Shown: positions 24,671-45,200 of the stretch, one piece after another
How the letters are laid out: each line of letters opens with the position of its first letter
Position numbering within the stretch: the first letter of the stretch is position 1
Virus record (IMG/VR): IMGVR_UViG_3300032322_001765
Span: 62,001 to 126,000 of that record
DNA length: 64,000 nucleotides
Strand: one strand, 5' to 3'
Program-made: the position numbers and the translations under genes
The notes under the pieces: model-generated
The model's database searches: none
Seen by the model: only the letters and a program-made list of their open reading frames with translations
Told to the model about the DNA's origin: nothing

Positions 24671-27600
24671 ATGTTTAATAGTGGGTTTAGGGGTAAAAGA
24701 GCTTCCGATAATACAGGTACAGTTGACAAACAAAGTCAGTTTGTGCAACAGAAGTACCCACAACCTAGTATTACTGGGTATAGTATTCAGGGCAGTGACG
24801 ATACAGCATTAAACCCAGCCGGTGGACAAACAGTATTAGTAAATGGTACTGGTTTTGCAAGCGGCGCCGCAGTTACAGTAAATGGTGTAACAATTAGCCC
24901 AGTTACAGTTATAAGTCCAACACAATTAAGTTTTACAAGTACAGCATTAGCAGGTGGAAGTTATACACTAATCGTTTATAATAGTACAGGCGGCGCAGCT
25001 ATATTAGTACCGGGTTTGGTTTACTCTAGTGTGCCTACATATACTACTCCAGCTGGAAGTATTGGTACAAGCTATGAAACTAGACCAATTAATACTAGTG
25101 TAGTTGCAACCAGCGATAGTCCCATTACTTATAGTTTAGCAAGTGGAAGTTTGCCTAGTGGTGCAACACTTTATGCAAATGGTGTAATTACAGGAACAAG
25201 TCCTATTGAAAGTGGCAGCACAACATATACTTTTGCTATCAAAGCAGAAGATGCAGAATTACAGGACGTTACTCGCACCTTCACATTAACAGTTAATACT
25301 GATGTAGTGACATGGAGTAGTCCGGCAAGTGGTGCAGTAATTTCTACTTACGAATATCTACCAATAGCTAACACTACATTAACAGCAACAAGTGCAGCAG
25401 GGTATGGTGTTCAATATAGTGGAACAAACTTACCTACTGGTATTAATATAAGCGGCAATTTATTAGTCGGTACAGCAAACACAGTAGCAAATACAAACAT
25501 AACATTAACAGCAACAGCAAATACAACAAATAGAACTGCAAACAGAACGGCTTATATAAATGTGCAACAGGATGCAGTAACATGGAATAGTCCCGCTGAC
25601 AATACGACATATACGGTGGCTGCAAATACAGCAATTAGTAACGTATCATTAAATGCAACTAGTGCTGCAGGTTTTGGTGTAGTATATGCAGCAAATACAT
25701 TACCCACTGGATTAACTTTATCGGGAAATATAATTGCTGGAACACCAACTGCTGTAGCAAATACTTCTTCATTATTAACTGCAACAGCGAATACATCTAA
25801 TAGAACTGCTACAAGAACAATTAATTGGGTAGTACAATTAGGAAATGATCCATATTTTAATTTAACTACACTCTTATTATCAGGGGAAACAACAAGTCCT
25901 TACTGGATACAGGATGCAAGTACGAATGGTTTCGCATTAACAGTAAATGGCGATACAAGACCAGTTGCTTTGAGTCCATATAATGTAAGCTGGAGTAATT
26001 ATTTTGATGGCAATGGTGATTATTTAAGTACACCTGCAAATACTGCATTTTCATTTGGTACAGGTGATTTTACTATAGAATGTTGGATAAACACAAGCGT
26101 TGGTGGTCTTGCGCCCGGTCCCGGATATTCACGTAGTATTATGTCAATGGGTGATTTAGTTTTTTATTTAAGAGTATCACAATATCATGGCGGAACTAAC
26201 GGAGCTTTAAGAGTAAGCGGATTGACTCCAATAGATGGATCTACTGTTACACTAACTGATGGATTTTGGCATCACATTGCAGTTGTTAGACAATCAAGTG
26301 TAGTAAGATATTGGATAGATGGGGTTTATCAAACAGAAGCATCTGGGTCAACTGTAACAACTAACTTTACTAATAATAATTTAAATGTAATAGGAGCACA
26401 AAGTAATCCAGTAGAAGGTTGGTTTAATGGATATATTAGTAATGTAAGAGTAGTTAAAGGTACAGCAGTATATATAGGAACAGCTAACTTTGTTCCTAGC
26501 ACATCTCCATTAACTGCTGTATCAGGTACAAGTTTATTAACATGTCAAAGTAATAGATTTATTGATAATAGTACAAATAGTTTTACGATATCTGTGTTTG
26601 GCAATACGTTTATTTCAAATTACGGGGGTGTAACAGAAACAGATTTAACAACAGGTAGTGGTTATTTTGATGGATCAACAGATTATATTACGCAAACCAC
26701 AAATTCAAGTTATGGTTTTGGTACTGGAGATTTTACAATTGAATTTTGGTTGTATTTGAATAGTACGGGGCTACAAACTATTTACAGTAACTTAGCTTCT
26801 GCATCTAGTACTAATCCTCATATCTATATTAGTAGTACTATACGATATTTTACTGCCAGTGCTGATAGAATTACTGGAAGTTCGTTAAGCACTAGTATAT
26901 GGTATCATATTGCGGTAGCTCGTGCCTCAGGATCAACCAAACTTTTCATAAATGGCACACAATCTGGATCGACTTATACCGATGGAAATAATTATGGGGC
27001 AACTGCACCTTTAGGTATTGGAACTTATTGGGAAGGTGGTTCACCGTATACGTCAAGTACATTATTTGGATATATAAACAATTTGCGTGTTGTAAAGGGA
27101 ACCGCAGTCTATACTTCAAACTTCACCCCGCCGGCATCACCTCTTACCGCAGTTGCAAATACAAGTCTATTAACATTGCAAAATAGATTTGGTGAAAACA
27201 ACAATCGTTTTGTTGATACATCTGGTATTAATAATATTATTACACGCAATGGTAATCCAACGCAAGGTACATTTAGTCCATTTAGTCAAACAGGTTGGAG
27301 TAATTATTTTGATGGAAATAGTGATTATATTTCAACAACACTACCTACTGCAATAGGTACAAGTAATTTTACATTTGAGGCGTGGGTTTACAGAGCAGCT
27401 CAAGCCAGTAATGATAGTATTTTTACTATTGGGGGTACTGGTAATTTATATGTACAATTTTATTTAACGTATTTTAGATGTTGGGTCGGAGGTTTAAGTT
27501 CATCATTTCTTGAGTATGACGGAGTTGTAAATAATACATGGTACCATGTTGCCTGTACAAGATCAGGTTCTACTGTTAGATTATTTTTAAATGGTACACT

Positions 27601-29752
27601 AAGAGCTTCAGGATCAACATCACAGAATTTAACAGATACAACTACTAGAATAGGTGCATTAGATTTAAGTGCTGGAACTTGGTGGACAGGATATATTAGT
27701 AATTTACGACTTGTTATAGGAACGGCTCTTTATACTGCAACATTTACTCCGTCAACTACTCCACTTGCACCGGTCACAAATACTGCATTATTAACCTGTC
27801 AAACATATAGAATAATAGACAATAGTGGTAATAGACTAACATTAACAAGAAATGGTGATGTCAGTACTCATTCGTTTGGGCCATTTGGACCATCAATAAC
27901 TACACCAGTAAGTTACAGTGGCTATTTTGATGGAAATGATTCTTTAACTTATACACATGGTTCAGAGTTGGCTTTTGGCACAGGTGATTTCACAATAGAA
28001 TATTGGTTGTATGCTAACAGTGCCGTACATCAAGGTATCCTGCAGGGTGATATCAACGTAGGTTGGGGATTATTTGTTTTAAGTGGAACTCTTTATTGGC
28101 AAAGTGTGGTTAATCAAGTCAATCGGTTAACTGCGAGTGTGGCTGCATATTTAACAGCCATATGGAGGCACTGGGCACTAGTGCGGTCGAGCGGAACCCT
28201 AAGTTTATATATTGATGGGCAGTTGATTACATCAGTAGCGGACAGCACAAACTATTCTGATGCATCAGGCACTTTCTATATTGGTCAGGCTCCGGTACTC
28301 GCCATATACATAAATGGATACTTATCAAATTTAAGAATAGTAAAAGGCACCGCAGTATACACTTCTAATTTTACACCACCAACTAGCCCATTAACTGCAA
28401 TTGCAAATACAAGTTTATTGACATGTCAATCAAGTACATTTATCGATAACAGTGCAAACTATTTTACAATAACTGCGAGTGGTAATACAATACCATCAGA
28501 ATTTAATCCATTTGGAATAACTTCTGCAACAGGTGGAAGTGCAACGTATTCAGTAGCCACTATTGGTGGAAGTTCATACTTTGATGGCACAGGAGATTAT
28601 TTGACTGTACTTGATAATGTTGGATTTCACTTTACAGGTAATTTTACAATTGAAGCATGGGTATATAGAAGCAGTACAGCATATGGATGTATAGCAGCAC
28701 AGTGGGTGGCAAATTCGCCGTCAGATACATCATGGATATTCAGTGTTAACGCCAATGGTACAATTTATTTTGCATATAATATATCCGGCGCAGTTGGCAC
28801 TTCGGGTACCACTGCAATTGCCACTCCGTTTCAATGGAATCACGTAGCGGTTACACGGTTGGGAACTACTCTAAGATTTTTTGTAAACGGAGTTGTTGAT
28901 GCAAGTACTTTTACTGTCTCTGGTTCATTTGTGAATTCAGCCGGAGCCGTAACTGTTGGAATTGTTAATACTAGTGACGGCGGTGCATTTAACGGATTCA
29001 TTCATGGTCCTAGAATAGTACAAGGTAAAGCACTATACACAACGTCATTCTCACCTAGTACTACACCTTTACAATCTATTAATGCAACTTCGTTGTTAGT
29101 GACGGGAACTAACGCAGGCATATTTGATTATACAAGTAGAATGAGTTTAGAAACTGTAGGTAGTAGTACTCAACTCTCTACATTAGTTAAAAAGTTTGGT
29201 AATTCTAGTATGTCGTTTAATGGATCGACAACCAGCTTAACTAGTTCAGCAACGATAACTTCGCCTCAATTATCGTTTGGTGCCGGCAACTTTACAATAG
29301 AAGGATGGTTTTATTTTAACAGTGTTGCATCAAGAGCAGCAATAATAAATCAAGGTTGGGGCGAAACAGGATATAATACCCAAGGTGGTTTTACATTCGA
29401 TATAGCAGGAAATACTGGTGGCGCACTTTCATTAGCTGTAGGAACTGAAAATTCAGGTGCGTTTTGGTTACAGAGTATGGGATCATTTACAACTGGCGTG
29501 TGGTATCATATAGCATTGGTTAGAAATGGAGTTAATATTAGCGTATATTCTAATGGAACATCTATAGGATCAGGTAATTTATCTGGAGGAGCAAGCACAC
29601 TTGTAGGTAATATGGGAAGAATAACTATAGGCTCATATCAAAATGGCGGTTTCCCATTCAATGGTTATGTTGACGATTTTAGAATAACTAAAGGATATGC
29701 AAGATATACAGGTAATTTTACAGCACCAACAAGTGCATTTAGTCTATTTTAA
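24671..29752 (+). CDS. Adhesin: IPT/TIG + Ig-like domains + 6 LamG (concanavalin-A-like) domains
   Basis: PAGGQTVLVNGTGF (IPT/TIG) and YSLASGSLPSGATL..GVITGT (putative Ig) modules. Six units of YFDG.DY..GTGDFTIE.W..W.H.A..R..Y(I/L)(S/N)NLR.VKG. Confidence 0.85.
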   Translation: MFNSGFRGKRASDNTGTVDKQSQFVQQKYPQPSITGYSIQGSDDTALNPAGGQTVLVNGTGFASGAAVTVNGVTISPVTVISPTQLSFTSTALAGGSYTLIVYNSTGGAAILVPGLVYSSVPTYTTPAGSIGTSYETRPINTSVVATSDSPITYSLASGSLPSGATLYANGVITGTSPIESGSTTYTFAIKAEDAELQDVTRTFTLTVNTDVVTWSSPASGAVISTYEYLPIANTTLTATSAAGYGVQYSGTNLPTGINISGNLLVGTANTVANTNITLTATANTTNRTANRTAYINVQQDAVTWNSPADNTTYTVAANTAISNVSLNATSAAGFGVVYAANTLPTGLTLSGNIIAGTPTAVANTSSLLTATANTSNRTATRTINWVVQLGNDPYFNLTTLLLSGETTSPYWIQDASTNGFALTVNGDTRPVALSPYNVSWSNYFDGNGDYLSTPANTAFSFGTGDFTIECWINTSVGGLAPGPGYSRSIMSMGDLVFYLRVSQYHGGTNGALRVSGLTPIDGSTVTLTDGFWHHIAVVRQSSVVRYWIDGVYQTEASGSTVTTNFTNNNLNVIGAQSNPVEGWFNGYISNVRVVKGTAVYIGTANFVPSTSPLTAVSGTSLLTCQSNRFIDNSTNSFTISVFGNTFISNYGGVTETDLTTGSGYFDGSTDYITQTTNSSYGFGTGDFTIEFWLYLNSTGLQTIYSNLASASSTNPHIYISSTIRYFTASADRITGSSLSTSIWYHIAVARASGSTKLFINGTQSGSTYTDGNNYGATAPLGIGTYWEGGSPYTSSTLFGYINNLRVVKGTAVYTSNFTPPASPLTAVANTSLLTLQNRFGENNNRFVDTSGINNIITRNGNPTQGTFSPFSQTGWSNYFDGNSDYISTTLPTAIGTSNFTFEAWVYRAAQASNDSIFTIGGTGNLYVQFYLTYFRCWVGGLSSSFLEYDGVVNNTWYHVACTRSGSTVRLFLNGTLRASGSTSQNLTDTTTRIGALDLSAGTWWTGYISNLRLVIGTALYTATFTPSTTPLAPVTNTALLTCQTYRIIDNSGNRLTLTRNGDVSTHSFGPFGPSITTPVSYSGYFDGNDSLTYTHGSELAFGTGDFTIEYWLYANSAVHQGILQGDINVGWGLFVLSGTLYWQSVVNQVNRLTASVAAYLTAIWRHWALVRSSGTLSLYIDGQLITSVADSTNYSDASGTFYIGQAPVLAIYINGYLSNLRIVKGTAVYTSNFTPPTSPLTAIANTSLLTCQSSTFIDNSANYFTITASGNTIPSEFNPFGITSATGGSATYSVATIGGSSYFDGTGDYLTVLDNVGFHFTGNFTIEAWVYRSSTAYGCIAAQWVANSPSDTSWIFSVNANGTIYFAYNISGAVGTSGTTAIATPFQWNHVAVTRLGTTLRFFVNGVVDASTFTVSGSFVNSAGAVTVGIVNTSDGGAFNGFIHGPRIVQGKALYTTSFSPSTTPLQSINATSLLVTGTNAGIFDYTSRMSLETVGSSTQLSTLVKKFGNSSMSFNGSTTSLTSSATITSPQLSFGAGNFTIEGWFYFNSVASRAAIINQGWGETGYNTQGGFTFDIAGNTGGALSLAVGTENSGAFWLQSMGSFTTGVWYHIALVRNGVNISVYSNGTSIGSGNLSGGASTLVGNMGRITIGSYQNGGFPFNGYVDDFRITKGYARYTGNFTAPTSAFSLF

Positions 29753-29764
29753 GGATTATAAATA

Positions 29765-30226: not shown

Positions 30227-30230
30227 TAAA

Positions 30231-33200
30231 ATGGCAGATTATTTTCAAATTAAAAATCAAAGTATCTTAAACCCGCCGGCTAATACTAATTTAGGTAATT
30301 CTACGAACCAGTTTAATACTGCCTATATCCAAAGTAACTTAGTCGTTTCTAATACTACGTTTACGTCATCAACATTAGGTGCTCCTAAAATTACTACAAT
30401 TACATACCCTGGCGACGATACTGCCGCAGATACAGCAGGTGGTCAAACAATTACATTAACTGGTAGTGGTTTTCTAAATGGAGCTAGTGTATTAATCAAT
30501 GGGAGTGCGGTTGGTGTTGTTACAGTAGTTAATAATACAACAATAACCTTTACAAGCCCTGCTAACAATGCAGGTAGTTATGTTCTTTATGTGATTAATA
30601 CAGATGGTAGCACAGCTATTGCTATACCAGGTATACAATATAGTGGCACACCAAATTGGACTACAGCAGCAGGAACTTTAGGTACAGTCTATGAAACACA
30701 AAGTTTTAGTAATACAGTTGTTGCTACAGGTGATGCTCCGATAAGTTATAGTTTGTTTAGTGGCACGCTACCAACGGGTGCTACACTAAACAGTAACGGT
30801 ACAATAACTGGAACAAGCAGTAGTACCGCAAATTCAACGACCTATACATTTACTATTCGTGCAACCGATAACGAACAACAGGATACTAACAGACAATTTA
30901 GTTTAACAATTAATCCAGACGTGGTTACATGGAGTAACCCAGCTAATGCCTCAGTTATCAACTCATATGAATATGTTGCCATAAGCAATACAACATTAAG
31001 TGCAACAAACTTAGTTGGTGGCAACATCAGTTATACTGGTGCAAATTTACCAGCTGGTATTACTGTTACTGGTAATTTATTAACCGGAACATCAAACACT
31101 GTTGCTAATACAACGGTTACTCTAACTGCTACTTCAAATACATCAACTAGAAGTGCTGATAGAACAACTTTTATCAATGTACAACAGGATGTTGTAACAT
31201 GGAACAGTCCTGCAAACAACAATACATATACATCCGATGTTAATAGTGCGATTAGTAACGTTACACTAAATGCAACCAGCGCCGCTGGTTTTAGTGTTAG
31301 TTATAGTGCAAATACATTACCAACAGGCTTAACAATAACTGGTAACGTAATTGCTGGAACTCCAACTGTTGCAGCAAATTCTAGTTCACTAATTACTGCA
31401 ACAGCGGCGACAACAAATAGAAGTGCTACAAGAACTTTTAACTGGGTAATACAAGTTGGCAACGATCCGTATTTTAATTTAGTTACGTTATTGTTAAATG
31501 GCGAAACAAGTAGTAATTATTGGACACAAGATGCAAGTACAAATAAATTCGCAGTTACAGTAGTTGGTGATACAAGACCTATGGCATTTAGTCCATATGA
31601 AACTGTTTGGAGTAATTATTTTGATGGCACTGGGGATTATCTATCTTCGACTGCCACATCTGCGACTCAAATGGGTTCTTCAACATTTACAACGGAACTT
31701 TGGTATTACTGCAATTCGTTGGCAGCAGATCAGTGTCTTTATATTCAGCAAGATGCAGATGTACAAAATAATAGCAGTTTGTCCTACGGATTCTTTGTTG
31801 CCCCAACTAGTGGTACATTAACGGTTCTTCTTGCTCAATCAAATAGTAGATATGACTTTGCCGTTACTAATGCAATAAAGACAGGAACTTGGTATCACAT
31901 TGCCCTTGTCAGAAACGGAAATGTATTTACTTTGTATATTAACGGAGTAAGTGCTGGCACAACTACGCAAGCAATTACCCTCAACTCAAACGCCCTAAAT
32001 TACATCGGCACTTATATCAACGCTGGCGCAGGCCAGAACATGTCGGTTAATGGGTACATCAGCAATTTTAGAATTGTAAAAGGCACTGCACTTTACACAT
32101 CAAACTTTACACCACCAACATCACCACTCACAGCGATAGCAAATACAAGTTTATTAACATGTCAAACAAACAGATTAATAGATAACAGTACAAATAATTT
32201 TACACTAACAAGAAACGGAGATGTAAGTGTACGTAATTTTGGTCCATTCACAGAAACAGATTTAACAACAGGTAGTGGTTATTTTGATGGTACCGGCGAC
32301 TACATTTCTGCACCGTATTCAGCTAGCACAGCTAATTGGTACAGCTCTAATACTACTATAGAAATGTGGGTTTATCCTTTTTCTATAACAGTTAGCGGTA
32401 CTAATTCTGCACCCCTCCAAATTTCTCATGGTCAATTTAATTCTGATGTATTATATTGGAGTTTTGGTTATAACGCTTCAGGTCGTGTGGGGTTATATTA
32501 TTTCAACGGTGGAACACAAAACGTTACTGCTACTTCTGGAACGGTTTTAGTAAATCAGTGGAATCATCTTGCTATGACACATAACAATTCTTCGGGAGAA
32601 ATCAGATTATATTTAAATGGAACTTTAGTAGGTACAGGTACTAAATCTGGAACTCCGCAGTCAAGTGCTTCTTTCCCAATAAACATAGGTGTTGCTCAAT
32701 CAACTTATTACACTGGTTATATTTCTAATTTAAGAATAGTTAATGGTACATTAGTTTACACCGCTAACTTTACCCCACCTACTGCACCACTTACAGCAAT
32801 TACAAATACAAGCCTATTAACATTACAAAATCGATTTGGTGAAAACAATAATCGTTTTGTCGATACATCTGGCATCGGTAATTTTATTACCCGTAACGGT
32901 AACACAACGCAGGGTGCGTTATCGCCGTTTAGTCAGACAGGATGGAGTTACTATCAAGATGGTACTTCAACATATCTATCATATGGTTCAAGTGCAGATT
33001 TTACTTTTGGTACAGGCGATTTTACAGTTGAAGCTTGGATTTTTGTAACAAGTATAGGAACCGGTTTTAGTATGTTTAATGTTGGTAGTGCAAATGCCGG
33101 AGCTTATAGTTTGTATGTTAACGGTTCTGGTAATATTGAAAGCACAAGATACGGTGATGGTGCCGGAGCAGGAAGAACGACATCAACAATAACTACAAAT

Positions 33201-35393
33201 ACTTGGGTTCACATTGCAGCTGTCCGTGCCAGCGGCACTGCTAGAGTTTATATAAATGGAACTTCAGACTCCGGTGCAACTTATAGTATGGGTAATATTA
33301 CTGCCACAGTAGCAGAAACAGGTCGTATTTGGCAAACAGGATACACAGGAACAAGTTATATTTCTAATCTTAGAGTTTGTAAGGGTACAGCGGTGTATAC
33401 GAATAACTTTACACCAGCTACATCACCTTTAACTATAACAAGTCAAAGTGCGTCAAATTGCGTATTACTTACATTCCAAAATAATAGATTCGTTGATGCA
33501 TCTAGTTCTCCAAAAACCTGCACACCAAGTGGAACACCATCTGTACAATCTTTCAGTCCATTCGTATCAGCAATCATAACACCAACAAGTTATAGTGGTT
33601 ATTTTGATGGCAATGGAGATTATTTAAGTGGCCCACAAAACGCAGCATTTGCATTTGGGACAGGTAGCTTTACAGTTGAATTTTTTGTTTATACAATAAG
33701 TACAACAGCGCAAATGGTATTTGATACTTTGCAACCAAATACACCCGGTGGCGGATCAAATAGATTTTATGTTTATATTAAGTCCGATCAGAAAATAGTT
33801 ACTGGACCTGCCACACAAGAATTAACTAGCACAGGTACTATACAACTTGGTGCATGGACCCACGTAGCTGTCGTTCGTAATGGAACATCAAGAATAATTT
33901 ATATTAATGGTGTTGCAAATGGTTCTGATACCTTTAATAATAATTTAACTGAAAACTATTGCACTATTGGTTTTGACGCAGCAACAAACGGCACCATTAT
34001 TATTAATGGATATTTAAGTAACTTGCGGGTCGTGAAGGGTACAGCAGTTTATACTTCAGCATTTACCTCACCAACCTCACCATTAACTGCAATATCAGGT
34101 ACAAGTTTATTAACATGTGAGTCAAATAGATTTATCGATAACAGTACAAACAATTTTACAATCACAGTAAACGGAAATTCAATACCAAGACAATTTAATC
34201 CGTTTGGTAATACATCAACTACAGGAACTAATTCAGTTTATGGAATAACTACAGTAGGCGGTAGTGGATACTTTGACGGATCTAGTAATTACTTACTAGT
34301 ACCAGACAATACGGCGTTAGAATCCTTTAATGATTTTACAATTGAATTTTGGGTATATTTTACTTCTGTTTCAACAGCGCAGATTATAATAGATAAGGGC
34401 TGGAACAACGGAGGCGGTTATAGCCCTTATTTCATACTTCTATCTGGTGGGAATTTATTAGCATATGCTTCTTCTTCAGGTACAGTTAACGACGTACTAT
34501 CTGGTGCGTCTTTTGGAGCCATGGTGGCGGGTCAATGGTATCATATTGCTTTGACTAGATCGGGTTCTGCTATTAAATTATTTACCAATGGTGCTGTAAT
34601 TACTTCTGCTACAAATTCATCTACACTTATGAGTAACAGTACTAATTTGGGAGTAGGATCCGTTCCATTAACAGGTGCTTTCTTACTTAATGGTTATCTA
34701 TCAAATTTGAGAATAATCAAAGGCTCTGCTGTTTATACTTCAGCATTTGTGCCTCCGGTTGCACCAGTCTCTGCAATCAGTAACACAGTTTTATTGTTGA
34801 ACTTTACAAATAGTGGTATCGTTGATTATACAAGTAAAAATAATTTACAGACTGTAGGCAATACGCAATTAAGTACAACACAAACTAAGTTTGGCAATGC
34901 GAGTATGAGTTTTGACGGTAGTGGGGATTACGTTGCTGCTCTATCAAATCAAACAGGTGTATTTGGAACAGGCAATTTTACTATTGAGGGGTGGTTTTAT
35001 TGGAATTCACTTGCAAGTGAATCTGCTATTGTTTTTAACAATGATGGAGCCACTTTTCGTTTTTGGACTTTTTACATATTTCCAGCAAGCAAATTGCAGT
35101 GGGGCAAATGGGACGCAAACTTGATAACCGGCGCAACAACTTTAGTAACTGGACAGTGGTATCATATCGCCGTGACACGGGCCAGCGGCACAGTTAGATT
35201 GTTTGTGAATGGCGTAGTTGATGGCTCCGCAACTGATACCACCAATTACAATTCAACTGGATTCGTGGAACTTGGTAAAAGTCATAGCGGTAATTTTTTC
35301 AATGGGTATGTGGATGATTTTCGCATCACCAGAGGTTTCGCACGTTATACTGCTAACTTTACGCCACCAACAACGGCGTTTTTAACTTATTAA
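30231..35393 (+). CDS. Adhesin: IPT/TIG + Ig-like + 6 LamG domains
   Basis: Same architecture as 24671 and 41115. Confidence 0.85.
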   Translation: MADYFQIKNQSILNPPANTNLGNSTNQFNTAYIQSNLVVSNTTFTSSTLGAPKITTITYPGDDTAADTAGGQTITLTGSGFLNGASVLINGSAVGVVTVVNNTTITFTSPANNAGSYVLYVINTDGSTAIAIPGIQYSGTPNWTTAAGTLGTVYETQSFSNTVVATGDAPISYSLFSGTLPTGATLNSNGTITGTSSSTANSTTYTFTIRATDNEQQDTNRQFSLTINPDVVTWSNPANASVINSYEYVAISNTTLSATNLVGGNISYTGANLPAGITVTGNLLTGTSNTVANTTVTLTATSNTSTRSADRTTFINVQQDVVTWNSPANNNTYTSDVNSAISNVTLNATSAAGFSVSYSANTLPTGLTITGNVIAGTPTVAANSSSLITATAATTNRSATRTFNWVIQVGNDPYFNLVTLLLNGETSSNYWTQDASTNKFAVTVVGDTRPMAFSPYETVWSNYFDGTGDYLSSTATSATQMGSSTFTTELWYYCNSLAADQCLYIQQDADVQNNSSLSYGFFVAPTSGTLTVLLAQSNSRYDFAVTNAIKTGTWYHIALVRNGNVFTLYINGVSAGTTTQAITLNSNALNYIGTYINAGAGQNMSVNGYISNFRIVKGTALYTSNFTPPTSPLTAIANTSLLTCQTNRLIDNSTNNFTLTRNGDVSVRNFGPFTETDLTTGSGYFDGTGDYISAPYSASTANWYSSNTTIEMWVYPFSITVSGTNSAPLQISHGQFNSDVLYWSFGYNASGRVGLYYFNGGTQNVTATSGTVLVNQWNHLAMTHNNSSGEIRLYLNGTLVGTGTKSGTPQSSASFPINIGVAQSTYYTGYISNLRIVNGTLVYTANFTPPTAPLTAITNTSLLTLQNRFGENNNRFVDTSGIGNFITRNGNTTQGALSPFSQTGWSYYQDGTSTYLSYGSSADFTFGTGDFTVEAWIFVTSIGTGFSMFNVGSANAGAYSLYVNGSGNIESTRYGDGAGAGRTTSTITTNTWVHIAAVRASGTARVYINGTSDSGATYSMGNITATVAETGRIWQTGYTGTSYISNLRVCKGTAVYTNNFTPATSPLTITSQSASNCVLLTFQNNRFVDASSSPKTCTPSGTPSVQSFSPFVSAIITPTSYSGYFDGNGDYLSGPQNAAFAFGTGSFTVEFFVYTISTTAQMVFDTLQPNTPGGGSNRFYVYIKSDQKIVTGPATQELTSTGTIQLGAWTHVAVVRNGTSRIIYINGVANGSDTFNNNLTENYCTIGFDAATNGTIIINGYLSNLRVVKGTAVYTSAFTSPTSPLTAISGTSLLTCESNRFIDNSTNNFTITVNGNSIPRQFNPFGNTSTTGTNSVYGITTVGGSGYFDGSSNYLLVPDNTALESFNDFTIEFWVYFTSVSTAQIIIDKGWNNGGGYSPYFILLSGGNLLAYASSSGTVNDVLSGASFGAMVAGQWYHIALTRSGSAIKLFTNGAVITSATNSSTLMSNSTNLGVGSVPLTGAFLLNGYLSNLRIIKGSAVYTSAFVPPVAPVSAISNTVLLLNFTNSGIVDYTSKNNLQTVGNTQLSTTQTKFGNASMSFDGSGDYVAALSNQTGVFGTGNFTIEGWFYWNSLASESAIVFNNDGATFRFWTFYIFPASKLQWGKWDANLITGATTLVTGQWYHIAVTRASGTVRLFVNGVVDGSATDTTNYNSTGFVELGKSHSGNFFNGYVDDFRITRGFARYTANFTPPTTAFLTY
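32187..32236 (+). repeat. 50-bp exact repeat shared between LamG adhesin genes (second copy 42675-42724)
   Basis: agtacaaataattttacactaacaagaaacggagatgtaagtgtacgtaa is identical at both sites, within a ~140-bp near-identical inter-LamG linker. Confidence 0.9.
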
Positions 35394-36665: not shown

Positions 36666-36667
36666 TA

Positions 36668-36675: not shown

Positions 36676-36696
36676 CTATAATTAGAATAAAAAATT

Positions 36697-39600: not shown

Positions 39601-39768
39601 ATTAATGATTTAGCAGGTACATTTGGTAGTAATGCATGTACTATAAACAGAAATGGACATAACATTCAAGGTGTTGCAGATGATTTAGTTGCAAATACGG
39701 CACAGGCTAGCTTTGGTTTAGTGTACAGTAATAGCACATATGGTTGGAAGATATTAGAGGTAGTATAA
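36697..39768 (+). CDS. Fibre protein (1023 aa) with C-terminal YxVDT..TLP..GW coupler domain
   Basis: MAITLLQPFNLD anchor, seven QPN(I/V)TS repeats, a knob module, two (F/Y)TGNG modules and the coupler domain shared with 29765. Confidence 0.85.
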   Translation: MAITLLQPFNLDTAGNYTFNTLTANIKTDNLMYANGSPYVFSGNPAGTNTQVQFNDANSFGASAAFTFNKSSNVLTISGNLTSTNANLGNLVTANFVTGTLTTGAQPNITSTGTLSSLTVTGLVIATANGVKTANIYDSTGTLTIETKYGNSAGDAGVYGNLTVGTSGTGNITAYNANLGNLVIGNFLQGTLTTQAQPNITSVGTLSSLSVTANVSAGNVLTNNLLYANGVAWSFGSTYSNTNVAAYLPTYTGNIAANYFIGNGATLTNLTGGNVTGQVANALIAGTVYTNAQPNITSVGTLASLTVSGNANVSTNLNVTGNALVSGNLTVQGNTNYINVDTLVVEDPIIELGGGPNGAPLTTNDGKDRGTLLHYYTTAPVDAFMGWDNSNGEFAFGSNVSLSSEVVTFNSFGNVRASYFIGNGSQLTGVVGSANYSTFAGTVLTNAQPNITSVGTLASLTVTGNLTAGNANLGNLVIANFFSGNGSLLTSITGGNVSGQVGNALIAGTVYTNAQPNITSVGTLSSLTVTANISSGNANLGNLVTSNYFVGDGSLLSSIAAGNITGQVANALIAGTVYTNAQPNITSVGTLTSTTLAANSNITMSGSLSQISGANLIDATYLTGTLTTAAQPNVTSLGTLTGLTVSGNLSFTGANAYFSNISNVKIPGGSANYVIITDGSGNLSWAAQTGGGGGGTPGGSNTQLQFNDGGSFAGTANVTYDKTTNTLSVTGNASFTGANVSLGNIANLKITGGSNGYFLSTDGAGNLSWTQESVSALNITVDDFTGNGVQSNFTLSTTPVSEDFTIVSLAGTFQPRTTYTVSGNVISFSSAPPNNAPIEVTTFAGYAATPAVYTTRTYTGNGSQTVFTVTSGSSVDSLLVTENGVLQVPTTDYTVAGASLTFTTAPSSNVAIQVRELPTSLGGAGGLTWNIANANATMSASNGYFVDTSAGAKTMTLPASASLGDTIRINDLAGTFGSNACTINRNGHNIQGVADDLVANTAQASFGLVYSNSTYGWKILEVV

Positions 39769-41099
39769 TGCCACAGAATTTAAAAAGTTTAGTTACACAA
39801 TCATTATATCCTAAAATTACAACAGTCACTACCGAAAGTGCTACTGCTGTTATACCAGCCGGCGGCGAAACAGTTACAGTTACAGGTAGTGGTTTTTTAA
39901 GTGGTGCAGTTGTTTGGATAAACAATAGCAATGTATCTACCACATTTACTAGCTCAACAACGTTAACTTTTACTTCTCCTGCACAAAGTGCTGGATTTTA
40001 TCAATTATTTGTATATAACACCGATGGGTCAGTTGCTACTAAACCAGGTGGATTAATTTATAATGCAGCTCCTGTTTGGTCAACTGCAAGTGGAGCGTTA
40101 CTTCCTCTTGTAACTAATGTTGCATATAGTACAACTTTAGTTGCTACAAGCGGAACAATAACATATTCAATAACTTCAGGAAGTTTGCCTTCAGGAATTT
40201 CATTAAATTCTAGTACTGGAGTAATATCGGGCACCTCTTCAGTCACTACCGGTACTTTTAGTTTTACTGTTGCGGCGACTAATGAATACAATCAAGTTAC
40301 AACAAGAAATTTTAGCATCACAGTATCAGCATTAATAGTAGAAACATTATTAGTAGCTGGTGGTGGAGCCGGCTCCGGTGGCGGCGGTGGAGCAGGTGGG
40401 TTATTATATTATGGATCTGAAACACCAAAAACACCTAACGGTAGTGCTTTAGGATTACAAACAGGTGTTACATACAGTATTACAGTGGGCGGTGGAGGCA
40501 CAAGTTCAAGTAATGGATCTAATAGTGTAATGTCAGGTACAAACTTTACAACATTAACCGCAGTAGGTGGCGGAGCCGGCGGTGGCGGCTCAAATGGCGG
40601 GAACGGTGGATCAGGAGGTGGTGCTCCGAGAATTATTCCAACTGGCATAGGATTAGGCACGACAGGGCAAGGTAATAACGGTGGAACAGGTGTTGATGCA
40701 AACAATGCTTCAGGTGGCGGTGGTGGAGCCGGCGCGGTTGGTGGTAATGCTGGCGGAGCCGGCGGTAATGGTGGTGCTGGATTAAATTATAGTATATCAG
40801 GATCCTCAGTAGGATACGCTGGTGGAGGAGGTGGTGGTGGTGCTAACGGCGGTGGTTCGGCCGCACAAGGGGGTGGCGCAGGTGCCAGTGGTGGCGCAGC
40901 CTCAGGCACTACAAACACAGGTGGAGGTGGTGGAGGTATTTACACTAATGGTCCGGGTGCCGGTGGTTCCGGAGTAGTAATATTACGATATTCTGACAGT
41001 CTAGCAGCAGCCACTAGTACAACAGGATCTCCAACATACACAGTGACAGGTGGCTACAGAATTTATAGGTTTACCGGCAACGGATCAATAACATTTTAA
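39768..41099 (+). CDS. IPT/TIG + Ig-like + glycine-rich adhesin
   Basis: Start moved to ATG 39768 (TAATG overlap; MPQNLKSLV). Contains PAGGETVTVTGSGF and YSITSGSLPSGISL, then a polyglycine domain with the same C-terminus as 35784 and 47509. Confidence 0.8.
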   Translation: MPQNLKSLVTQSLYPKITTVTTESATAVIPAGGETVTVTGSGFLSGAVVWINNSNVSTTFTSSTTLTFTSPAQSAGFYQLFVYNTDGSVATKPGGLIYNAAPVWSTASGALLPLVTNVAYSTTLVATSGTITYSITSGSLPSGISLNSSTGVISGTSSVTTGTFSFTVAATNEYNQVTTRNFSITVSALIVETLLVAGGGAGSGGGGGAGGLLYYGSETPKTPNGSALGLQTGVTYSITVGGGGTSSSNGSNSVMSGTNFTTLTAVGGGAGGGGSNGGNGGSGGGAPRIIPTGIGLGTTGQGNNGGTGVDANNASGGGGGAGAVGGNAGGAGGNGGAGLNYSISGSSVGYAGGGGGGGANGGGSAAQGGGAGASGGAASGTTNTGGGGGGIYTNGPGAGGSGVVILRYSDSLAAATSTTGSPTYTVTGGYRIYRFTGNGSITF

Positions 41100-41114
41100 T
41101 TAAATTGTAATAAC

Positions 41115-44100
41115 ATGACTACAAAAATTTCTAGTGATAACATACAAACAGCAACACTTAATACATTAGGTGGACCTAAAATACAAACGATTACTTATCC
41201 AGGTGATGATACTGCTGCTGATCCAGCCGGCGGGCAAACGATTACATTGACTGGTTCAGGTTTTGAAGCAAGTGCAAGTGTTGTTATTAATACAACAGCA
41301 GTTGGTGTTGTTACAGTCGTAAGTTCTACTACAATTACTTTTACAACTCCGGCATTAAGTGCTGGTAGTTATACTCTTTACGTGATTAATCCAAATGGTG
41401 GAACTGCGATTGCAGTGCCGGGTATACAATATAGTGGTACGCCAACTTGGAGTACTGCTGCTGGTAGTTTGGGTAACGTATACGAAGCTGCTGCAATCAA
41501 TAATACATTAGTTGCTACTGGTGATGCACCCATTACATATAGTTTGTTTAGTGGTACACTTCCACTTACATCAACATTAAACAGTTCTACTGGTGTATTA
41601 AGTGGTACAGCAGATGCAACAGCAAGCCCAACTACATATACATTTACAATTCGTGCGACTGATGCAGAAAGTCAAGATACAAACAGACAATTTAGTTTAA
41701 CAATTAATCCAGACGTAGTTACATGGAATAGTCCTGCAAATAATATCACATATACTAGTAATGTAAATCAGGCTATCTCTAATGTTACAATGAGTGCTAC
41801 AAGTGCTGCAGGGTATGGTATCACATATACAGCTAATAGTTTACCAACTGGTTTAAGCATTAGTGGAGCAAACATTACAGGTACACCAACGGTTGTCGCA
41901 AATAGTAGTTCATTAATTACTGCAACAGCAAGTACATCGAATAGAACTGCAACCAGAACATTTAATTGGGTAGTACAGTTAGGCACTGACCCATATTTTA
42001 ATTTAACTACATTATTATTAAACTCTGAAGCATCTGCAAACGCATGGATAAGTGATAGTAGCACAAATAGTTTTGCAATTACTGTTAACGGTGATACAAG
42101 ACCTGCTGCATTTAGTCCATATGAAACAGTGTATAGTAATCAATTTGATGGCACTGGTGATTATTTAACTGTACCAACTAATGCTGCTTTGGATTTTGGT
42201 ACTGGGGATTTTACAGTTGAACTTTGGTGGTATCCAACTTCATTAGCAGCCGATCATGGATTTTTAGGAGCGACTGTTGGCGCTGGTTACGATTTTGTTT
42301 ATAGAACATCTACCGGTTTTAATATAGCAAGGATTAATGTAGCATTTGACAATACATTTGCTTATACCGCAGTTGTTAATACCTGGTATCATGTAGCGTA
42401 TTCTCGCTCAGGAACTAATTTAAGAGTATTTGTTAATGGTGTACAAATTGGCAGTACCGCTACAAATAGTATTTCGTATGGTACGAATGGAGGCACCGCA
42501 GTTATAGGTGGATCAACAAACGCAGACCGTTTACTAGCAGGATATATGTCTAACATGCGACTAGTCAAAGGCACTGCACTTTACACATCAAACTTTATAC
42601 CATCAACAACACCTTTAACAGCAGTGTCAGGTACAAGTTTATTAACATGTCAAAGTAATAGATTAATTGATAATAGTACAAATAATTTTACACTAACAAG
42701 AAACGGAGATGTAAGTGTACGTAACTTTGGCCCATTTGTAGAAACAGATTTAACAACTGGTAGTGGTTATTTTGATGGCACTGGAGATTGGTTAACGGCA
42801 ACGGCTAATTCTGCGTTTGCATTGGGGTCTGGGAATTTTACTATTGACGGTTGGATATATCCAACAGCATCAAATGGTATGATTATCGACACTAGAAATA
42901 CTAATGGAAGTGCAAGTGGATTCGCAGTAGAAACTGATTCATCTAACCAATTTTTAATTTATACAGATAGTGCTAAACTAACAGCAGGTACAGCACCTTT
43001 AAATATTTGGACTTTTTTTGCTATTGTAAGATCAGGTAGCACTATAACCGTATATGTTAATGGTGTTAGTGCAGGATCTTATTCTAGTTCACAAAATTTT
43101 TCAGATAATGCATTGGTTATTGCTAGTAATGAACCTAAAAATAAATCGTTGACTGGCTATCTAAGTAATGTTCGTATAGTAAAAGGTACAGCAGTTTATA
43201 CCACAACCTTTACCCCACCAACAAGTCCACTAACAGCAATTGCAAATACAAGTTTACTGACATTACAAAACAGATTTGGTGAAAACAATAATCGTTTTGT
43301 TGATACATCCGGTATTAATAATATTATTACACGTAATGGTAATACTACACAAGGTACATTTAGTCCGTTCAGTCAGACCGGTTGGAGTAATTATTTTGAT
43401 GGTAGCAGCACACTGTATTTCGCAGGAACACCTATCTCAACAACACAAACAAATTTTACAATTGAAGCTTGGGTTTATTTAACAGCAGATCCAACATTTG
43501 GTGGCGGCGTAGGTCAGGTGGTAGTCGATGGCGGCGGCTTGGCGGGAGGATCATTTTGGGGCTTCGGTTTAAATACATCAAGAAATATAGTATTCAGATG
43601 GTATGACGGAGCATCCGGTTTTAATTGTACTTCTACTAGTGCAGTTTCTCTCAACCAATGGGCTCACATTGCAGTATCAGTAAGTTCAAATGCAATTAAA
43701 CTATTTATAAATGGTAATTTACAAAGCACTACAGGAACATCTACCTTAACAAATCGTGGAGGTAATCAAGGTAACATTAACGTAGGAAGATACGCTACCT
43801 CAGATGCTTTGTATGGTTATATTTCCAATGCCAGAATTGTTACTGGTGCCGGCCTTTATTCTACCTCATTCACACCAAGCACAACTCCATTAACGACTAC
43901 TGTTCCTTCCGGAACAGTGGCATTTCTTACTGCCCAGTCAAATAGATTTGTCGATACTAGTACAAGTAATAGAACACCTGTTTTAGCTGGATCTACTTCT
44001 GTACAGGCATTTAGTCCATTCGTACCTACTACTGAGTATAGCGCAGCTACAGTGGGGGGTAGTATGTATTTTGATGGTACTGGAGATTATTTAACCGTAG

Positions 44101-45200
44101 CTTCTTCTACTGTATTTGGTTTGGGAACTGAAAATTTTACCTTTGAATGCTGGTTATACCCTACAGCAAATCCTGCAAATGGACCAGGTACTATTTTTGA
44201 TGCTCGTTCGGGAGTAGTAGCTGAAGGTTATGTAATTCGTGCGTTTAATGACAGAACGATTGGAATTTATACGTCTACAAATTCTTATGTTTATTCTACT
44301 GGAACTATTACTTTAAATGCGTGGAATCATATAGCACTAGTTCGAACATCAACGTCTACCAACGGTTTAGCTTTCTATATTAACGGAGCGGCTGCCGGAA
44401 CTGTTACTGTTAGTAGTAATTTGGGAACCTCATGGTCACCATTAATAGGTTACAATAGAGCAGGTTCAGGATTTGAATGGAATGGTTATATAAGTAATTT
44501 AAGACTTATTAAAGGTTCAGCATTCTATACATCCTCATTTTCGGCACCGGTTGCGCCACTAACTACTGTTGGAGCAACATTATTACTTAATGGCACTAAT
44601 AGTGGTATCATTGATTATACTAGCAAAAATAATTTAGAAACAGCTGGTAACGCACAACTATCATATAGTGTAAAAAAGTTTGGCAATGCGAGTATGAGTT
44701 TTGATGGAACGGGAGATTGGCTAATAATACCAAACAGCCAAAATTTTGTATTCGGCTTTGGTAATTGGACAATTGAACTGTGGGTAAGACCAGGAGCAAC
44801 AGGAAGACAGGGGTTTGTAGCATTAGAAAATGCTGCTGGTACAATCGTCCCATGGGAGTTAGGAATAAACAATGGAAACACATTCCGAGTGCTTGTGCAA
44901 ACATCTAGTGGACAGTATATAGTTGATGGAACAACATCTGTATCTACGAACACTTGGTATCACGTTGCAGCCGTAAGAAACGGATCTACAGTCACGCTTT
45001 ATGTGAACGGTACATCAGAGGGAACCCCGGCAAATGTTTCTACCAATGCTTTGGTTTCTGAAACATCTCCTATTTACGTCGGAACTTATAACTATGGATT
45101 TCCGTTGACCGGCTACATAGATGATCTACGTATCACTAAAGGCTATGCACGTTATACAAGTAATTTTACACCACCGACCTCAGCGTTCATTACGTATTAA
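41115..45200 (+). CDS. Adhesin: IPT/TIG + Ig-like + 5 LamG domains
   Basis: Paralogue of 30231 that lacks one Ig-like unit and the fourth LamG unit. MTTKISSDNI N-terminus. Confidence 0.85.
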   Translation: MTTKISSDNIQTATLNTLGGPKIQTITYPGDDTAADPAGGQTITLTGSGFEASASVVINTTAVGVVTVVSSTTITFTTPALSAGSYTLYVINPNGGTAIAVPGIQYSGTPTWSTAAGSLGNVYEAAAINNTLVATGDAPITYSLFSGTLPLTSTLNSSTGVLSGTADATASPTTYTFTIRATDAESQDTNRQFSLTINPDVVTWNSPANNITYTSNVNQAISNVTMSATSAAGYGITYTANSLPTGLSISGANITGTPTVVANSSSLITATASTSNRTATRTFNWVVQLGTDPYFNLTTLLLNSEASANAWISDSSTNSFAITVNGDTRPAAFSPYETVYSNQFDGTGDYLTVPTNAALDFGTGDFTVELWWYPTSLAADHGFLGATVGAGYDFVYRTSTGFNIARINVAFDNTFAYTAVVNTWYHVAYSRSGTNLRVFVNGVQIGSTATNSISYGTNGGTAVIGGSTNADRLLAGYMSNMRLVKGTALYTSNFIPSTTPLTAVSGTSLLTCQSNRLIDNSTNNFTLTRNGDVSVRNFGPFVETDLTTGSGYFDGTGDWLTATANSAFALGSGNFTIDGWIYPTASNGMIIDTRNTNGSASGFAVETDSSNQFLIYTDSAKLTAGTAPLNIWTFFAIVRSGSTITVYVNGVSAGSYSSSQNFSDNALVIASNEPKNKSLTGYLSNVRIVKGTAVYTTTFTPPTSPLTAIANTSLLTLQNRFGENNNRFVDTSGINNIITRNGNTTQGTFSPFSQTGWSNYFDGSSTLYFAGTPISTTQTNFTIEAWVYLTADPTFGGGVGQVVVDGGGLAGGSFWGFGLNTSRNIVFRWYDGASGFNCTSTSAVSLNQWAHIAVSVSSNAIKLFINGNLQSTTGTSTLTNRGGNQGNINVGRYATSDALYGYISNARIVTGAGLYSTSFTPSTTPLTTTVPSGTVAFLTAQSNRFVDTSTSNRTPVLAGSTSVQAFSPFVPTTEYSAATVGGSMYFDGTGDYLTVASSTVFGLGTENFTFECWLYPTANPANGPGTIFDARSGVVAEGYVIRAFNDRTIGIYTSTNSYVYSTGTITLNAWNHIALVRTSTSTNGLAFYINGAAAGTVTVSSNLGTSWSPLIGYNRAGSGFEWNGYISNLRLIKGSAFYTSSFSAPVAPLTTVGATLLLNGTNSGIIDYTSKNNLETAGNAQLSYSVKKFGNASMSFDGTGDWLIIPNSQNFVFGFGNWTIELWVRPGATGRQGFVALENAAGTIVPWELGINNGNTFRVLVQTSSGQYIVDGTTSVSTNTWYHVAAVRNGSTVTLYVNGTSEGTPANVSTNALVSETSPIYVGTYNYGFPLTGYIDDLRITKGYARYTSNFTPPTSAFITY

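What the first reader, a model, noticed from the sequence alone, without database searches (positions are those of the whole stretch)
24671..45200. LamG arrays have conserved linkers and divergent cores, with evidence of unit loss and recent exchange
Three paralogues share linkers such as TSLLTLQNRFGENNNRFVDTSG..ITRNGN.TQG..SPFSQTGWS (~27158, ~32801, ~43243) and TSLLTCQ.NR.IDNS..TETDLTTGSGYFDG, including a 50-bp exact DNA match (32187/42675). The LamG cores between the linkers differ strongly. ORF 41115 has 5 units instead of 6, lacking the fourth. Inference: linkers act as recombination handles for swapping lectin-like cassettes, diversifying adhesins without a retroelement or invertase.
Basis: partly seen in the sequence, partly recalled or inferred. 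Interest (0 to 1): 0.6.

Follow-up and report, generated by a model that had tools for sequence, protein, structure and literature searches.

The report
Phage lectin arrays with swappable cores
Three tail-fibre-like genes of a freshwater jumbo phage are strings of five or six lectin-like (LamG) domains in which one third of every domain is strongly conserved and the other two thirds are unrelated from copy to copy; related phages and lake metagenomes show that the variable parts are replaced whole by recombination in the conserved parts, a likely way to change what the phage binds.

Summary
Genes A (24671-29752), B (30231-35393) and C (41115-45200) encode TIG + Ig-like + 6, 6 and 5 Laminin_G_3 units. 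The conserved segments ("frames", about 80 aa) are position-specific and 70-89% identical between paralogues. The cores (about 130 aa) are 25-41% identical, with no positional signal.

The 50-bp exact match exists. C lacks one unit, and its junction is a hybrid 3|4-4|5 frame.

Two corrections:
- The "linkers" are not linkers. In a confident model they are the last strands of the preceding LamG sandwich.
- In this genome most frames are old (dS 1.05-1.4, like the N-terminus; dN/dS about 0.2). Only the 1|2 frame shows younger exchange (B-C dS 0.45).

The recombination-handle idea is supported by evidence from outside the window:
- Among 204 unit pairs from different viral contigs with frames at least 80% identical, 173 have cores below 35%.
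- In the pair L037/L048, frame dS is 0.23-0.80 and one core has dS 0.12, yet six cores have dN about 1.
- The same core types occur behind different frames.
- Lake-metagenome contigs show frame-bounded rearrangements of B.

No reverse transcriptase or site-specific recombinase was found in the 61%-complete record. I rate this a new variant of the known motif-mediated shuffling of phage adhesins.

The parts
24671..29752 (+). Gene A, 1693 aa: N-terminal TIG/He_PIG part (24671-25834), then six LamG units
   Evidence: ORF; translation; Pfam Laminin_G_3 x6 and He_PIG; PHROG baseplate wedge and virion structural families
30231..35393 (+). Gene B, 1720 aa: N-terminal part (30231-31451), then six LamG units
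   Evidence: two-unit model of B 632-1065 with pLDDT 85.7
41115..45200 (+). Gene C, 1361 aa: N-terminal part with one Ig-like repeat fewer (41115-41975), then five LamG units
26429..26674 (+). Frame A1|2 (C-part of unit 1 plus N-part of unit 2); holds the longest A-C (38 nt, from 26522) and A-B (41 nt, from 26633) identical runs
32052..32291 (+). Frame B1|2, the youngest shared tract (85% nt identity and dS 0.45 to C1|2); holds the 50-bp exact match 32187-32236
42540..42779 (+). Frame C1|2; holds the other copy of the 50-bp exact match, 42675-42724. Identity to B ends right after the codons for YFDG
27068..27316 (+). Frame A2|3 (TSLLTLQNRFGENNNRF type); 89% aa identity to C2|3 and 81% to B2|3
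32715..32963 (+). Frame B2|3; in lake contig X4 record 18 a 92% identical copy is followed directly by a B2-like core
43155..43403 (+). Frame C2|3; its N-part is 87-92% identical to unit-3 N-parts of three other phage records
43815..44078 (+). Hybrid frame C3|4: first half of the 3|4 type, second half of the 4|5 type. This is the junction of the one-unit difference from A and B
31629..32051 (+). Core B1, one example of the 17 variable cores. The other B cores are 32292-32714, 32964-33353, 33612-34007, 34281-34691 and 34920-35303; the A and C cores are listed. Six lake contigs of run X4 match up to 31640 and then diverge
33612..34007 (+). Core B4; in run X2 record 3 it is 98.5% identical (33552-34219) but preceded by a half frame of the 1|2 type
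39744..41099 (+). 451-aa protein with the same TIG + He_PIG N-terminus as C (48% over C residues 9-202) but a Gly_rich_2 distal part. This suggests the N-terminus is a shared attachment module
49872..50378 (+). Tail-fibre assembly chaperone; context for reading the locus as a tail-fibre or receptor-binding locus
   Evidence: Pfam Phage_tail_APC; PHROG tail fibre assembly

Best explanation
A, B and C are paralogous virion (tail-fibre or baseplate-associated) proteins of a freshwater jumbo phage. Each has an N-terminal TIG/Ig-like attachment part followed by a string of LamG (concanavalin-like lectin) domains.

Every LamG domain has two parts. The N-terminal two thirds (the core, about 130 aa) are variable and carry most of the exposed loops. 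The C-terminal third (the frame, about 80 aa, from GY.SN.R to YFDG) is conserved and position-specific. It supplies the last beta-strands and the connection to the next domain.

The frames are kept mainly by purifying selection on structure. Because they stay alike in DNA between paralogues and between co-infecting relatives, general homologous recombination and gene conversion start and end in them. The results are replacement of whole cores, movement of cores to other positions, loss or gain of whole units, and patches of concerted evolution in the frames themselves. The outcome is a combinatorial set of binding modules without a retroelement or a site-specific recombinase.

Shown: the architecture, the statistics, and the mosaic in relatives and metagenomes. 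Inferred: that the proteins bind host surface glycans, that recombination is the general homologous kind, and that selection for host range drives it.
For: Architecture and fold:
- Pfam and PHROG matches.
- Two-domain model with pLDDT 85.7. Best fold matches are laminin LG pairs, neurexin LNS, pentraxins and the PAPP-A LamG domain, Z 17-20.
- Domain limits at model residues 45-273, so the frame belongs to the preceding domain.

Locus: portal and major head genes lie upstream. Many tail-fibre-like ORFs, Gly_rich_2 proteins and a tail-fibre chaperone lie around the arrays.

Within the window:
- Frames are 70-89% identical and cores 25-41% with no diagonal.
- The frame tree is positional and the core tree is not.
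- The longest identical DNA runs of all three paralogue pairs lie in the 1|2 frame, P <= 0.0014.
- B1|2-C1|2 has dS 0.45, while the cores beside it have dN 0.77-0.96.
- Identity ends at the frame/core edge.
- C carries a hybrid frame at the unit-loss junction.

Family (79 viral loci, 441 units):
- Core identity stays at 0.25-0.30 for any frame identity from 0.3 to 0.9.
- Of 204 inter-contig pairs with frames >= 80%, 173 have cores < 35%, 17 are between and 14 are >= 60%.
- L037/L048: frame dS 0.23-0.80, core 1 dS 0.12, cores 2-7 dN 0.9-1.1, which exceeds the neighbouring synonymous divergence.
- L011/L012 show the same two-class pattern.
- 27 unit pairs have core >= 50% but N-part < 50%.
- The A1 core's only relative (62%) sits in the C-like array of record G001.

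Populations:
- 19 further freshwater or lake runs from 16 other studies hold 7-25% of B's 31-mers.
- Laid contigs cover frames heavily and cores sparsely.
- They include a 2|3 frame followed in register by a B2-like core (X4 record 18).
- A joint that skips B3 is seen in two studies (X3 record 10, X4 record 19).
- A B4 core at 98.5% identity lies behind another half frame (X2 record 3).

No RVT_1, Resolvase or Phage_integrase match in the record.
Against: - Within this genome, most frames are as old as the N-terminal region (dS 1.05-1.42 against 1.1-1.2), and core dN (about 0.85) does not exceed frame dS. A, B and C alone could therefore be old duplicates with fast-evolving cores.
- No core of A, B or C is shared between the three paralogues (highest identity 41%).
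- The core tree is uninformative (saturated), not strongly conflicting.
- The metagenome contigs are k=31 assemblies and could be chimeric exactly at repeated frames. Many listed joints have sides under 30 nt and were discounted.
- L037 and L048 are only moderately related phages (neighbouring genes 69-86% aa).
- The record is 61% complete, so a retroelement or recombinase could lie in the missing part.
- Binding function and virion location are untested.
Confidence: 0.7

Rival explanations
1. No cassette exchange. A, B and C are ancient duplicates. The frames are held by structural purifying selection, and the cores diverged in place under relaxed or diversifying selection until only fold-level similarity remained.
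For: Frame dS is 1.05-1.42, close to the N-terminal dS of 1.1-1.2. Frame dN/dS is about 0.2. Core dN of 0.82-0.88 is below frame dS. The frames are integral beta-strands of the fold. No core is shared between the three paralogues.
Against: This does not explain the younger 1|2 tract flanked by unrelated cores (dS 0.45 against core dN 0.77-0.96). It does not explain the two-class cores in L037/L048 and L011/L012, where core dN exceeds flanking dS. Nor does it explain cores found behind other frame types or the hybrid frame in C.
Confidence: 0.15
2. Recombination acts only on the frames. Gene conversion between paralogues and between phages homogenises the frames, while the cores themselves are never moved.
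For: All long identical runs in the window lie inside frames and stop at the core edges. L037/L048 frames are more alike than the neighbouring genes.
Against: Related cores occur at different positions and behind different frame types: L075 unit 3 and L002 unit 2 share 70% in the core and 49% in the frame; L017 unit 2 and L007 unit 3 share 81% and 48%; the A1 core matches G001b unit 1; X4 record 18 places a B2-like core behind a 2|3 frame. A conversion tract that ends at both core edges is formally the same event as a core swap.
Confidence: 0.1
3. Artefact. The mosaic comes from metagenome assemblers switching between strains or units at repeated frames, in the window or in the compared contigs.
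For: Frames give repeats longer than the assembly k-mers. Logan contigs use k=31, and the rearranged contigs join exactly in frames.
Against: Two IMG/VR records are 100% identical over 25 kb, and run X1 holds 99% of B's words. Within one genome the frames of different positions share at most 50 nt exactly. The same B3-skipping joint appears in two studies. Even if paths are chimeric, many unrelated cores between near-identical frames must exist in the samples.
Confidence: 0.04
4. Programmed diversification by a diversity-generating retroelement or an invertase shufflon.
For: None found. This is considered only because phage receptor-binding genes often use such systems.
Against: No RVT_1, Resolvase or Phage_integrase match in 220,867 bp. 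No near-identical template/variable repeat pair covers a core. Cores differ by insertions and deletions and along their whole length. All genes lie on one strand.
Confidence: 0.01

Closest known systems
gp38 adhesins and distal tail-fibre locus of T-even phages: hypervariable segments between conserved glycine-rich motifs (Tetart et al. 1996, 1998, as cited in Trojet et al. 2011, PMC3157838)
   Same: A phage host-recognition protein built of alternating conserved and hyperplastic segments. Exchanges occur in or near the conserved motifs and give chimeric adhesins. There is no dedicated enzyme, and a 'networked' library is shared among related phages.
   Different: The fold and scale differ. 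There, short loops alternate with glycine-rich motifs in one small domain. Here, about 130-aa portions of LamG sandwiches sit between about 80-aa position-specific frames, repeated 5-6 times per protein, in three paralogues per genome. There is no sequence homology. Recombination was shown by crosses for gp38 and is only inferred here.
Laminin_G_3 / concanavalin-like lectin domains on tail fibres of jumbo phages (Iyer et al. 2021, PMC7824862)
   Same: The same domain family in the same kind of phage and the same virion context.
   Different: That survey records the presence of the domain. It does not describe the frame/core mosaic, position-specific frames or core replacement. Three literature searches found no such description.
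Tandem LG/LNS domains of laminin alpha chains and neurexins
   Same: Best fold matches for the two-unit model: strings of LamG sandwiches used for binding.
   Different: Identity is only 10-17%. The eukaryotic strings have EGF or linker spacers, and they diversify by splicing at loops, not by core replacement.
Antigenic-variation cassette systems using gene conversion at conserved flanks, such as Neisseria pilE/pilS and Borrelia vlsE (from general knowledge, not tested here)
   Same: Variable cassettes bounded by conserved sequence that guides homologous recombination.
   Different: Those use silent donor loci and one expression site within a cell lineage. Here all copies are full-length expressed-type genes, and the donors appear to be paralogues and other phages.

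Membership tests
Laminin_G_3 (PF13385), concanavalin A-like lectin/glucanase superfamily | Sequence match above Pfam's gathering score | tested here: met
   305, 351 and 299 bits against a cut-off of 27.6, with 6, 6 and 5 stretches; 22 domains in the whole record
Laminin_G_3 (PF13385), concanavalin A-like lectin/glucanase superfamily | Two-sheet beta-sandwich (jelly-roll) fold of LamG/pentraxin type | tested here: met
   Model with pLDDT 85.7. VIA-align Z 17-20 to the PAPP-A LamG domain, pentraxins and laminin LG4-5, over about 190-207 aligned residues per domain
Laminin_G_3 (PF13385), concanavalin A-like lectin/glucanase superfamily | Carbohydrate or calcium binding at the loop rim | not testable with these tools
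   No ligand-site analysis or assay was possible
Phage tail-fibre / receptor-binding proteins | Similarity to families annotated as virion, baseplate or tail-fibre proteins | tested here: met
   PHROG 13163, 1469 and 19601 (baseplate wedge subunit) and 8510, 701 (virion structural protein), E 1e-60 to 1e-110. These are annotation-level names only
Phage tail-fibre / receptor-binding proteins | Location in the structural module beside fibre genes and a fibre chaperone | tested here: met
   Portal 3602-5380, major head protein 8355-9557, tail-fibre-like ORFs on both sides, Phage_tail_APC at 49872-50378
Phage tail-fibre / receptor-binding proteins | Presence in the virion and binding to a host receptor | not testable with these tools
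   Uncultured phage with unknown host
T-even gp38-type adhesin (GRM/HVS) | Glycine-rich motifs separating short hypervariable segments in a gp38-homologous domain | tested here: not met
   Pfam and PHROG give only TIG, He_PIG and LamG families. The conserved blocks are beta-strand frames, not glycine-rich motifs. It works like gp38 but is not a member
T-even gp38-type adhesin (GRM/HVS) | Recombination endpoints in the conserved motifs | tested here: inconclusive
   Endpoints lie at frame edges in comparisons, but no cross or phased read was available
Diversity-generating retroelement target | Reverse transcriptase in the genome | tested here: not met
   No RVT_1 match in 220,867 bp; the control genomes ring. 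The record is 61% complete
Diversity-generating retroelement target | Template/variable repeat pair that is near-identical except at adenines | tested here: not met
   No direct repeat covers a core. The best repeats are the frames, at 60-87%. Adenine specificity was not examined, because no such pair exists
Invertase shufflon / site-specific cassette switch | Serine or tyrosine recombinase gene | tested here: not met
   No Resolvase or Phage_integrase match
Invertase shufflon / site-specific cassette switch | Inverted repeats flanking invertible segments | not tested
   Only direct repeats were scanned. All ORFs of 100 aa or more in the locus that look real lie on the + strand

The most novel reading that the evidence does not exclude
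The position-specific conserved C-terminal third of each LamG domain is more than a structural constraint. It acts as a built-in, addressable homology arm. A large group of freshwater jumbo phages would then share one 'socket' system, in which two-thirds-of-a-domain binding cassettes are exchanged between paralogues and between phages and land at defined array positions. That would be a recombination-based combinatorial receptor-binding repertoire whose cassette limits cut through a protein fold and do not fall between domains.
Probability: 0.35. Interest if true: 0.75.

Novelty: new variant of a known kind. Interest (0 to 1): 0.62.

Why it matters
Host range of uncultured jumbo phages is a main unknown in lake and other ecosystems. 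If the arrays are receptor-binding modules, this architecture shows how a phage can hold 17 or more different binding cores and renew them by ordinary recombination, without a retroelement. It also gives a natural design rule, namely where a LamG sandwich tolerates a splice (after YFDG and before GY.SN.R). That rule could guide engineering of lectin-like binders and of phage host range in laboratory systems. For metagenomics it is a warning: such genes are mosaic at a 400-600 bp scale, so short-read assemblies and whole-gene trees of them are unreliable.

Tried and rejected
- A megablast of A+B against 50,697 phage records found nothing. The major head protein places the phage near Vibrio phage 2.275.O, PA5oct and E. 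coli jumbo phages at 65-68% aa. No isolate is close.
- The first viral-contig scan with B used peptide words from the cores, so it returned only distant relatives (29-48% identity) plus a 100% identical second record, L001, which carries no variation. Scans with the N-terminal part and with the 2|3 frame found better relatives, but none is closer than the paralogues are to each other. Orthologue-by-orthologue core turnover could therefore not be measured for this phage itself.
- The core tree gives star-like long branches (median 1.35). I treat it as 'no signal', not as proof of conflict.
- Most 'joints' in the read table start at 31629-31647 and land on the conserved FGTGDFT-type motif of other units, with sides of 20-32 nt. 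These are contigs of other phages matching short conserved words, and I discounted them as real joints.
- Retroelement, serine recombinase and tyrosine recombinase searches were negative.
- The large protein searches, complex prediction and the protein atlas were not used, because the family scans had already settled the identity of the proteins.
- Read laying was given 5,163 letters.
Full report
**What the window is.** All sizeable ORFs lie on the + strand and GC is about 37%. The window is bases 62001-126000 of a 220,867-bp IMG/VR virus record that is rated 61% complete. A portal gene (3602-5380) and a major head protein gene (8355-9557) are followed by about 50 kb of very large tail-fibre-like genes, Gly_rich_2 proteins and a tail-fibre assembly chaperone. 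The head protein is 65-68% identical to those of Vibrio phage 2.275.O, Pseudomonas phage PA5oct and E. coli jumbo phages. This is therefore an uncultured jumbo myovirus-like phage. Runs that hold its DNA are freshwater and lake metagenomes.

**Checking the observation.** Genes A (24671-29752), B (30231-35393) and C (41115-45200) encode proteins of 1693, 1720 and 1361 aa.
- Pfam finds TIG, He_PIG and 6, 6 and 5 Laminin_G_3 stretches.
- PHROGs finds families named baseplate wedge subunit and virion structural protein.
- I cut each protein at two anchors present in every unit (YFDG and GY.SN.R).
- Frames of the same position are 70-89% identical between paralogues for 0|1, 1|2, 2|3 and 4|5, and 47-72% for 3|4 and 5|6.
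- All 136 core pairs are 25-41% identical, and same-position pairs are no better than any others.
- The 50-bp exact match 32187/42675 is real.

C lacks one Ig-like repeat and one LamG unit. Its 3|4 frame is a hybrid. The first half is most like B3|4, and the second half, with the first residues after YFDG, is most like A4|5. That is what an in-register unequal exchange between two frames would leave.

**What the 'linker' is.** I folded B 632-1065 (units 2 and 3) with an alignment of 118 two-unit segments. The model has mean pLDDT 85.7.
- Foldseek puts laminin LG4-5 pairs and neurexin LNS strings on top.
- VIA-align places whole pentraxin and LamG domains (for example 3flp_A residues 1-217, PTX3, PAPP-A; Z 18-20) on model residues 45-273. 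Smaller CBM40 lectin domains fall on 274-434.
- A structural domain therefore runs from just before YFDG, through the core and the GY.SN.R strand, and on through the following 'N-part' (SLLTCQ...). In the model, that N-part forms strands only where the preceding core is present.

The conserved block is thus the C-terminal third of each LamG sandwich, not a flexible linker. This alone gives a reason for purifying selection on it. It also means that the variable cassette is two thirds of a fold.

**Age of the frames in this genome.** Nei-Gojobori estimates are:

| Region | dS | Other |
|---|---|---|
| N-terminal part | 1.09-1.22 | |
| All frames together | 1.05-1.42 | dN 0.23-0.28 |
| Cores | saturated (pS 0.67-0.71) | dN 0.82-0.88 |

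Most frames are therefore as old as the gene duplications and are held by selection. Within the window alone, old duplicates with fast cores cannot be excluded.

The exception is the 1|2 frame. B-C have dS 0.45 and 85% nt identity there. The longest identical runs of all three pairs lie in this one frame: B-C 50 nt, A-B 41 nt, A-C 38 nt. Codon shuffles give P <= 0.0014. The three-way alignment shows near-complete identity, synonymous sites included, over the codons for SLLTCQ and for ETDLTTGSGYFDG, and the identity collapses at the first core codon. The cores on either side of this younger tract have dN 0.77-0.96, above the tract's dS. An exchange with endpoints at the frame/core edges has therefore happened here.

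**Trees.** I used the 17 window units and 14 units of three related records.
- The frame tree groups units by array position. It needs 5 label changes, against a mean of 19.1 in 1000 shuffles, none of which was as low.
- The core tree has long terminal branches and no positional signal (20 changes against 19.2).

Even so, the core tree is uninformative and does not conflict strongly.

**The family.** A scan of IMG/VR with B gave 79 loci. A unit HMM found 441 LamG units in 108 ORFs holding 1-10 units each.
- Over 83,232 unit pairs, core identity stays at a median of 0.24-0.28 whatever the frame identity between 0.3 and 0.9.
- Of 204 inter-contig pairs with frames at least 80% identical (fully identical units removed), 173 have cores below 35%, 17 are intermediate and 14 are at 60% or more.

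The clearest case is L037 against L048, two 7-unit genes from different metagenomes.
- Frames are 82-98% identical at all seven positions, with dS 0.23-0.80.
- Core 1 is 90% identical, with dS 0.12.
- Cores 2-7 are 19-30% identical, with dN 0.9-1.1.
- DNA identity alternates between about 85-100% in the frames and about 25-55% in the cores.

A core dN several times the flanking dS, across a whole beta-sandwich and with indels, points to replacement rather than in-place change. These two phages are only moderately related elsewhere (neighbouring genes 69-86% aa). The frames and unit 1 are thus at least as alike as the neighbouring genes. L011/L012 show the same two classes.

The reverse pattern also occurs. 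In 27 unit pairs the core is at least 50% identical while the N-part is below 50%. Examples, given as core and frame identity:
- L075 unit 3 with L002 unit 2: 70% and 49%.
- L017 unit 2 with L007 unit 3: 81% and 48%.
- L032 units 1 and 2: 85% in the core, with only 35% in the N-part.

**Closer relatives of this phage.** Scans with the N-terminal part and with the 2|3 frame found four more records.
- Their unit-3 N-parts are 87-92% identical to A3 or C3, and the best unit-2 N-part (L085) is 81% identical to B2 and C2. Their cores are 17-30% identical.
- Array number varies. Two complete genomes have one array, and record G001 has two.
- G001b is C-like in its N-terminus (67%), and its first N-part is most like B1 and C1 (78% and 74%). 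Its first core, however, is the only relative of core A1 (62%, against 26% to B1 and C1).

**Populations.** One run holds 99% of B's sampled 31-mers and is probably the source. Nineteen other freshwater or lake runs from 16 other studies hold 7-25%. I laid contigs of four of them on B (5,163 letters).
- Frames collect many contigs and cores few. Core B6 collects almost none.
- Six contigs of run X4 match up to 31640, the first codons of core B1, and then run on unlike.

Three contigs look like frame-bounded rearrangements:
- X4 record 18 has a 2|3 frame (32787-32950, 92%) joined in register to a B2-like core (32279-32561, 91.5%).
- X3 record 10 and X4 record 19, from different studies, join 32582-32821 through 79 other letters to 33552-33630, skipping unit 3.
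- X2 record 3 has core B4 at 98.5% behind a half frame of the 1|2 type.

These are k=31 contigs and could be chimeric at repeats, so I count them as support, not proof. Joints with sides under 30 nt were discounted.

**Other mechanisms.** No RVT_1, Resolvase or Phage_integrase match exists in the record. No template-like repeat covers a core. All genes are on one strand.

**Comparison with what is known.** LamG3 domains on jumbo-phage fibres have been noted (PMC7824862). The working principle is conserved motifs that guide recombination and swap hypervariable adhesin segments, giving a library shared among related phages. It is established for T-even gp38 and the distal fibre locus (PMC3157838, citing Tetart et al. 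1996 and 1998). The present case works like that system but is not a member of it. The fold differs, the cassette is 130 aa, the frames are position-specific, there are 5-10 sockets per protein and several paralogues per genome. Three literature searches found no description of it.

**Verdict.** The recombination-handle reading is supported at the level of the family and of natural populations, and for the 1|2 frame and the unit loss in this genome. 'Recent exchange' is overstated for the other frames. 'Linker' should be replaced by 'conserved C-terminal third of the LamG fold'. I rate this a new variant of a known kind, with interest 0.62.

Noticed in passing
window 10387-50378: A second, interleaved paralogue family of tail-fibre-like genes (10387, 12568, 20515, 23094, 29765, 36697, 45235, 48506) shares patchy 33-70% aa segments in different orders. 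The whole 40-kb locus therefore looks mosaic, not only the LamG genes.
   Followed up: partly
window 35763-36665, 39744-41099, 47509-48471: Three Gly_rich_2 proteins have last 41-46 residues that are 76-83% identical while the rest is more diverged. This is another conserved-end, variable-body pattern.
   Followed up: partly
window 39744-41099: This 451-aa protein has the same TIG + He_PIG N-terminus as gene C (48% over C residues 9-202), but a glycine-rich distal domain in place of a LamG array. This suggests a shared virion-attachment module with exchangeable distal parts.
   Followed up: partly
window 56327-64000 (runs off the window; 4525 aa in the record): A giant ORF carries five more Laminin_G_3 domains, only 33-37% identical to C, so the record holds 22 LamG domains in all. 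Whether its frames follow the same rule was not examined.
   Followed up: no
window 41115-41975 against 24671-25834 and 30231-31451: Gene C lacks one of the Ig-like (He_PIG-type) repeats present in A and B (A residues about 213-302). This is a second whole-module length difference.
   Followed up: partly
window 24309-24668, 35416-35784, 47150-47506: Small ORFs of 118-122 aa sit beside the large fibre genes. 24309 and 47150 are 32% identical, and 35416 matches PHROG 7759 of unknown function. They may be fibre chaperones or adaptors.
   Followed up: no
L001 (IMGVR_UViG_3300033571_018919) against window 20231-45390: A second IMG/VR record of 127 kb is 100% identical over 25,160 bp. The same phage genotype was therefore assembled twice.
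   Followed up: yes
G002 (L085 record, 162 kb) and G003 (L087 record, 214 kb): Two complete relatives with direct terminal repeats have a single LamG-array gene. G001 has two and this phage has three, so the array gene number itself varies.
   Followed up: partly
window 12568-20496: A 2642-aa ORF has no Pfam match and only weak tail-fibre PHROG matches. Several of its parts are 41-70% identical to five smaller neighbouring genes, as if it were a concatenation of their modules.
   Followed up: no
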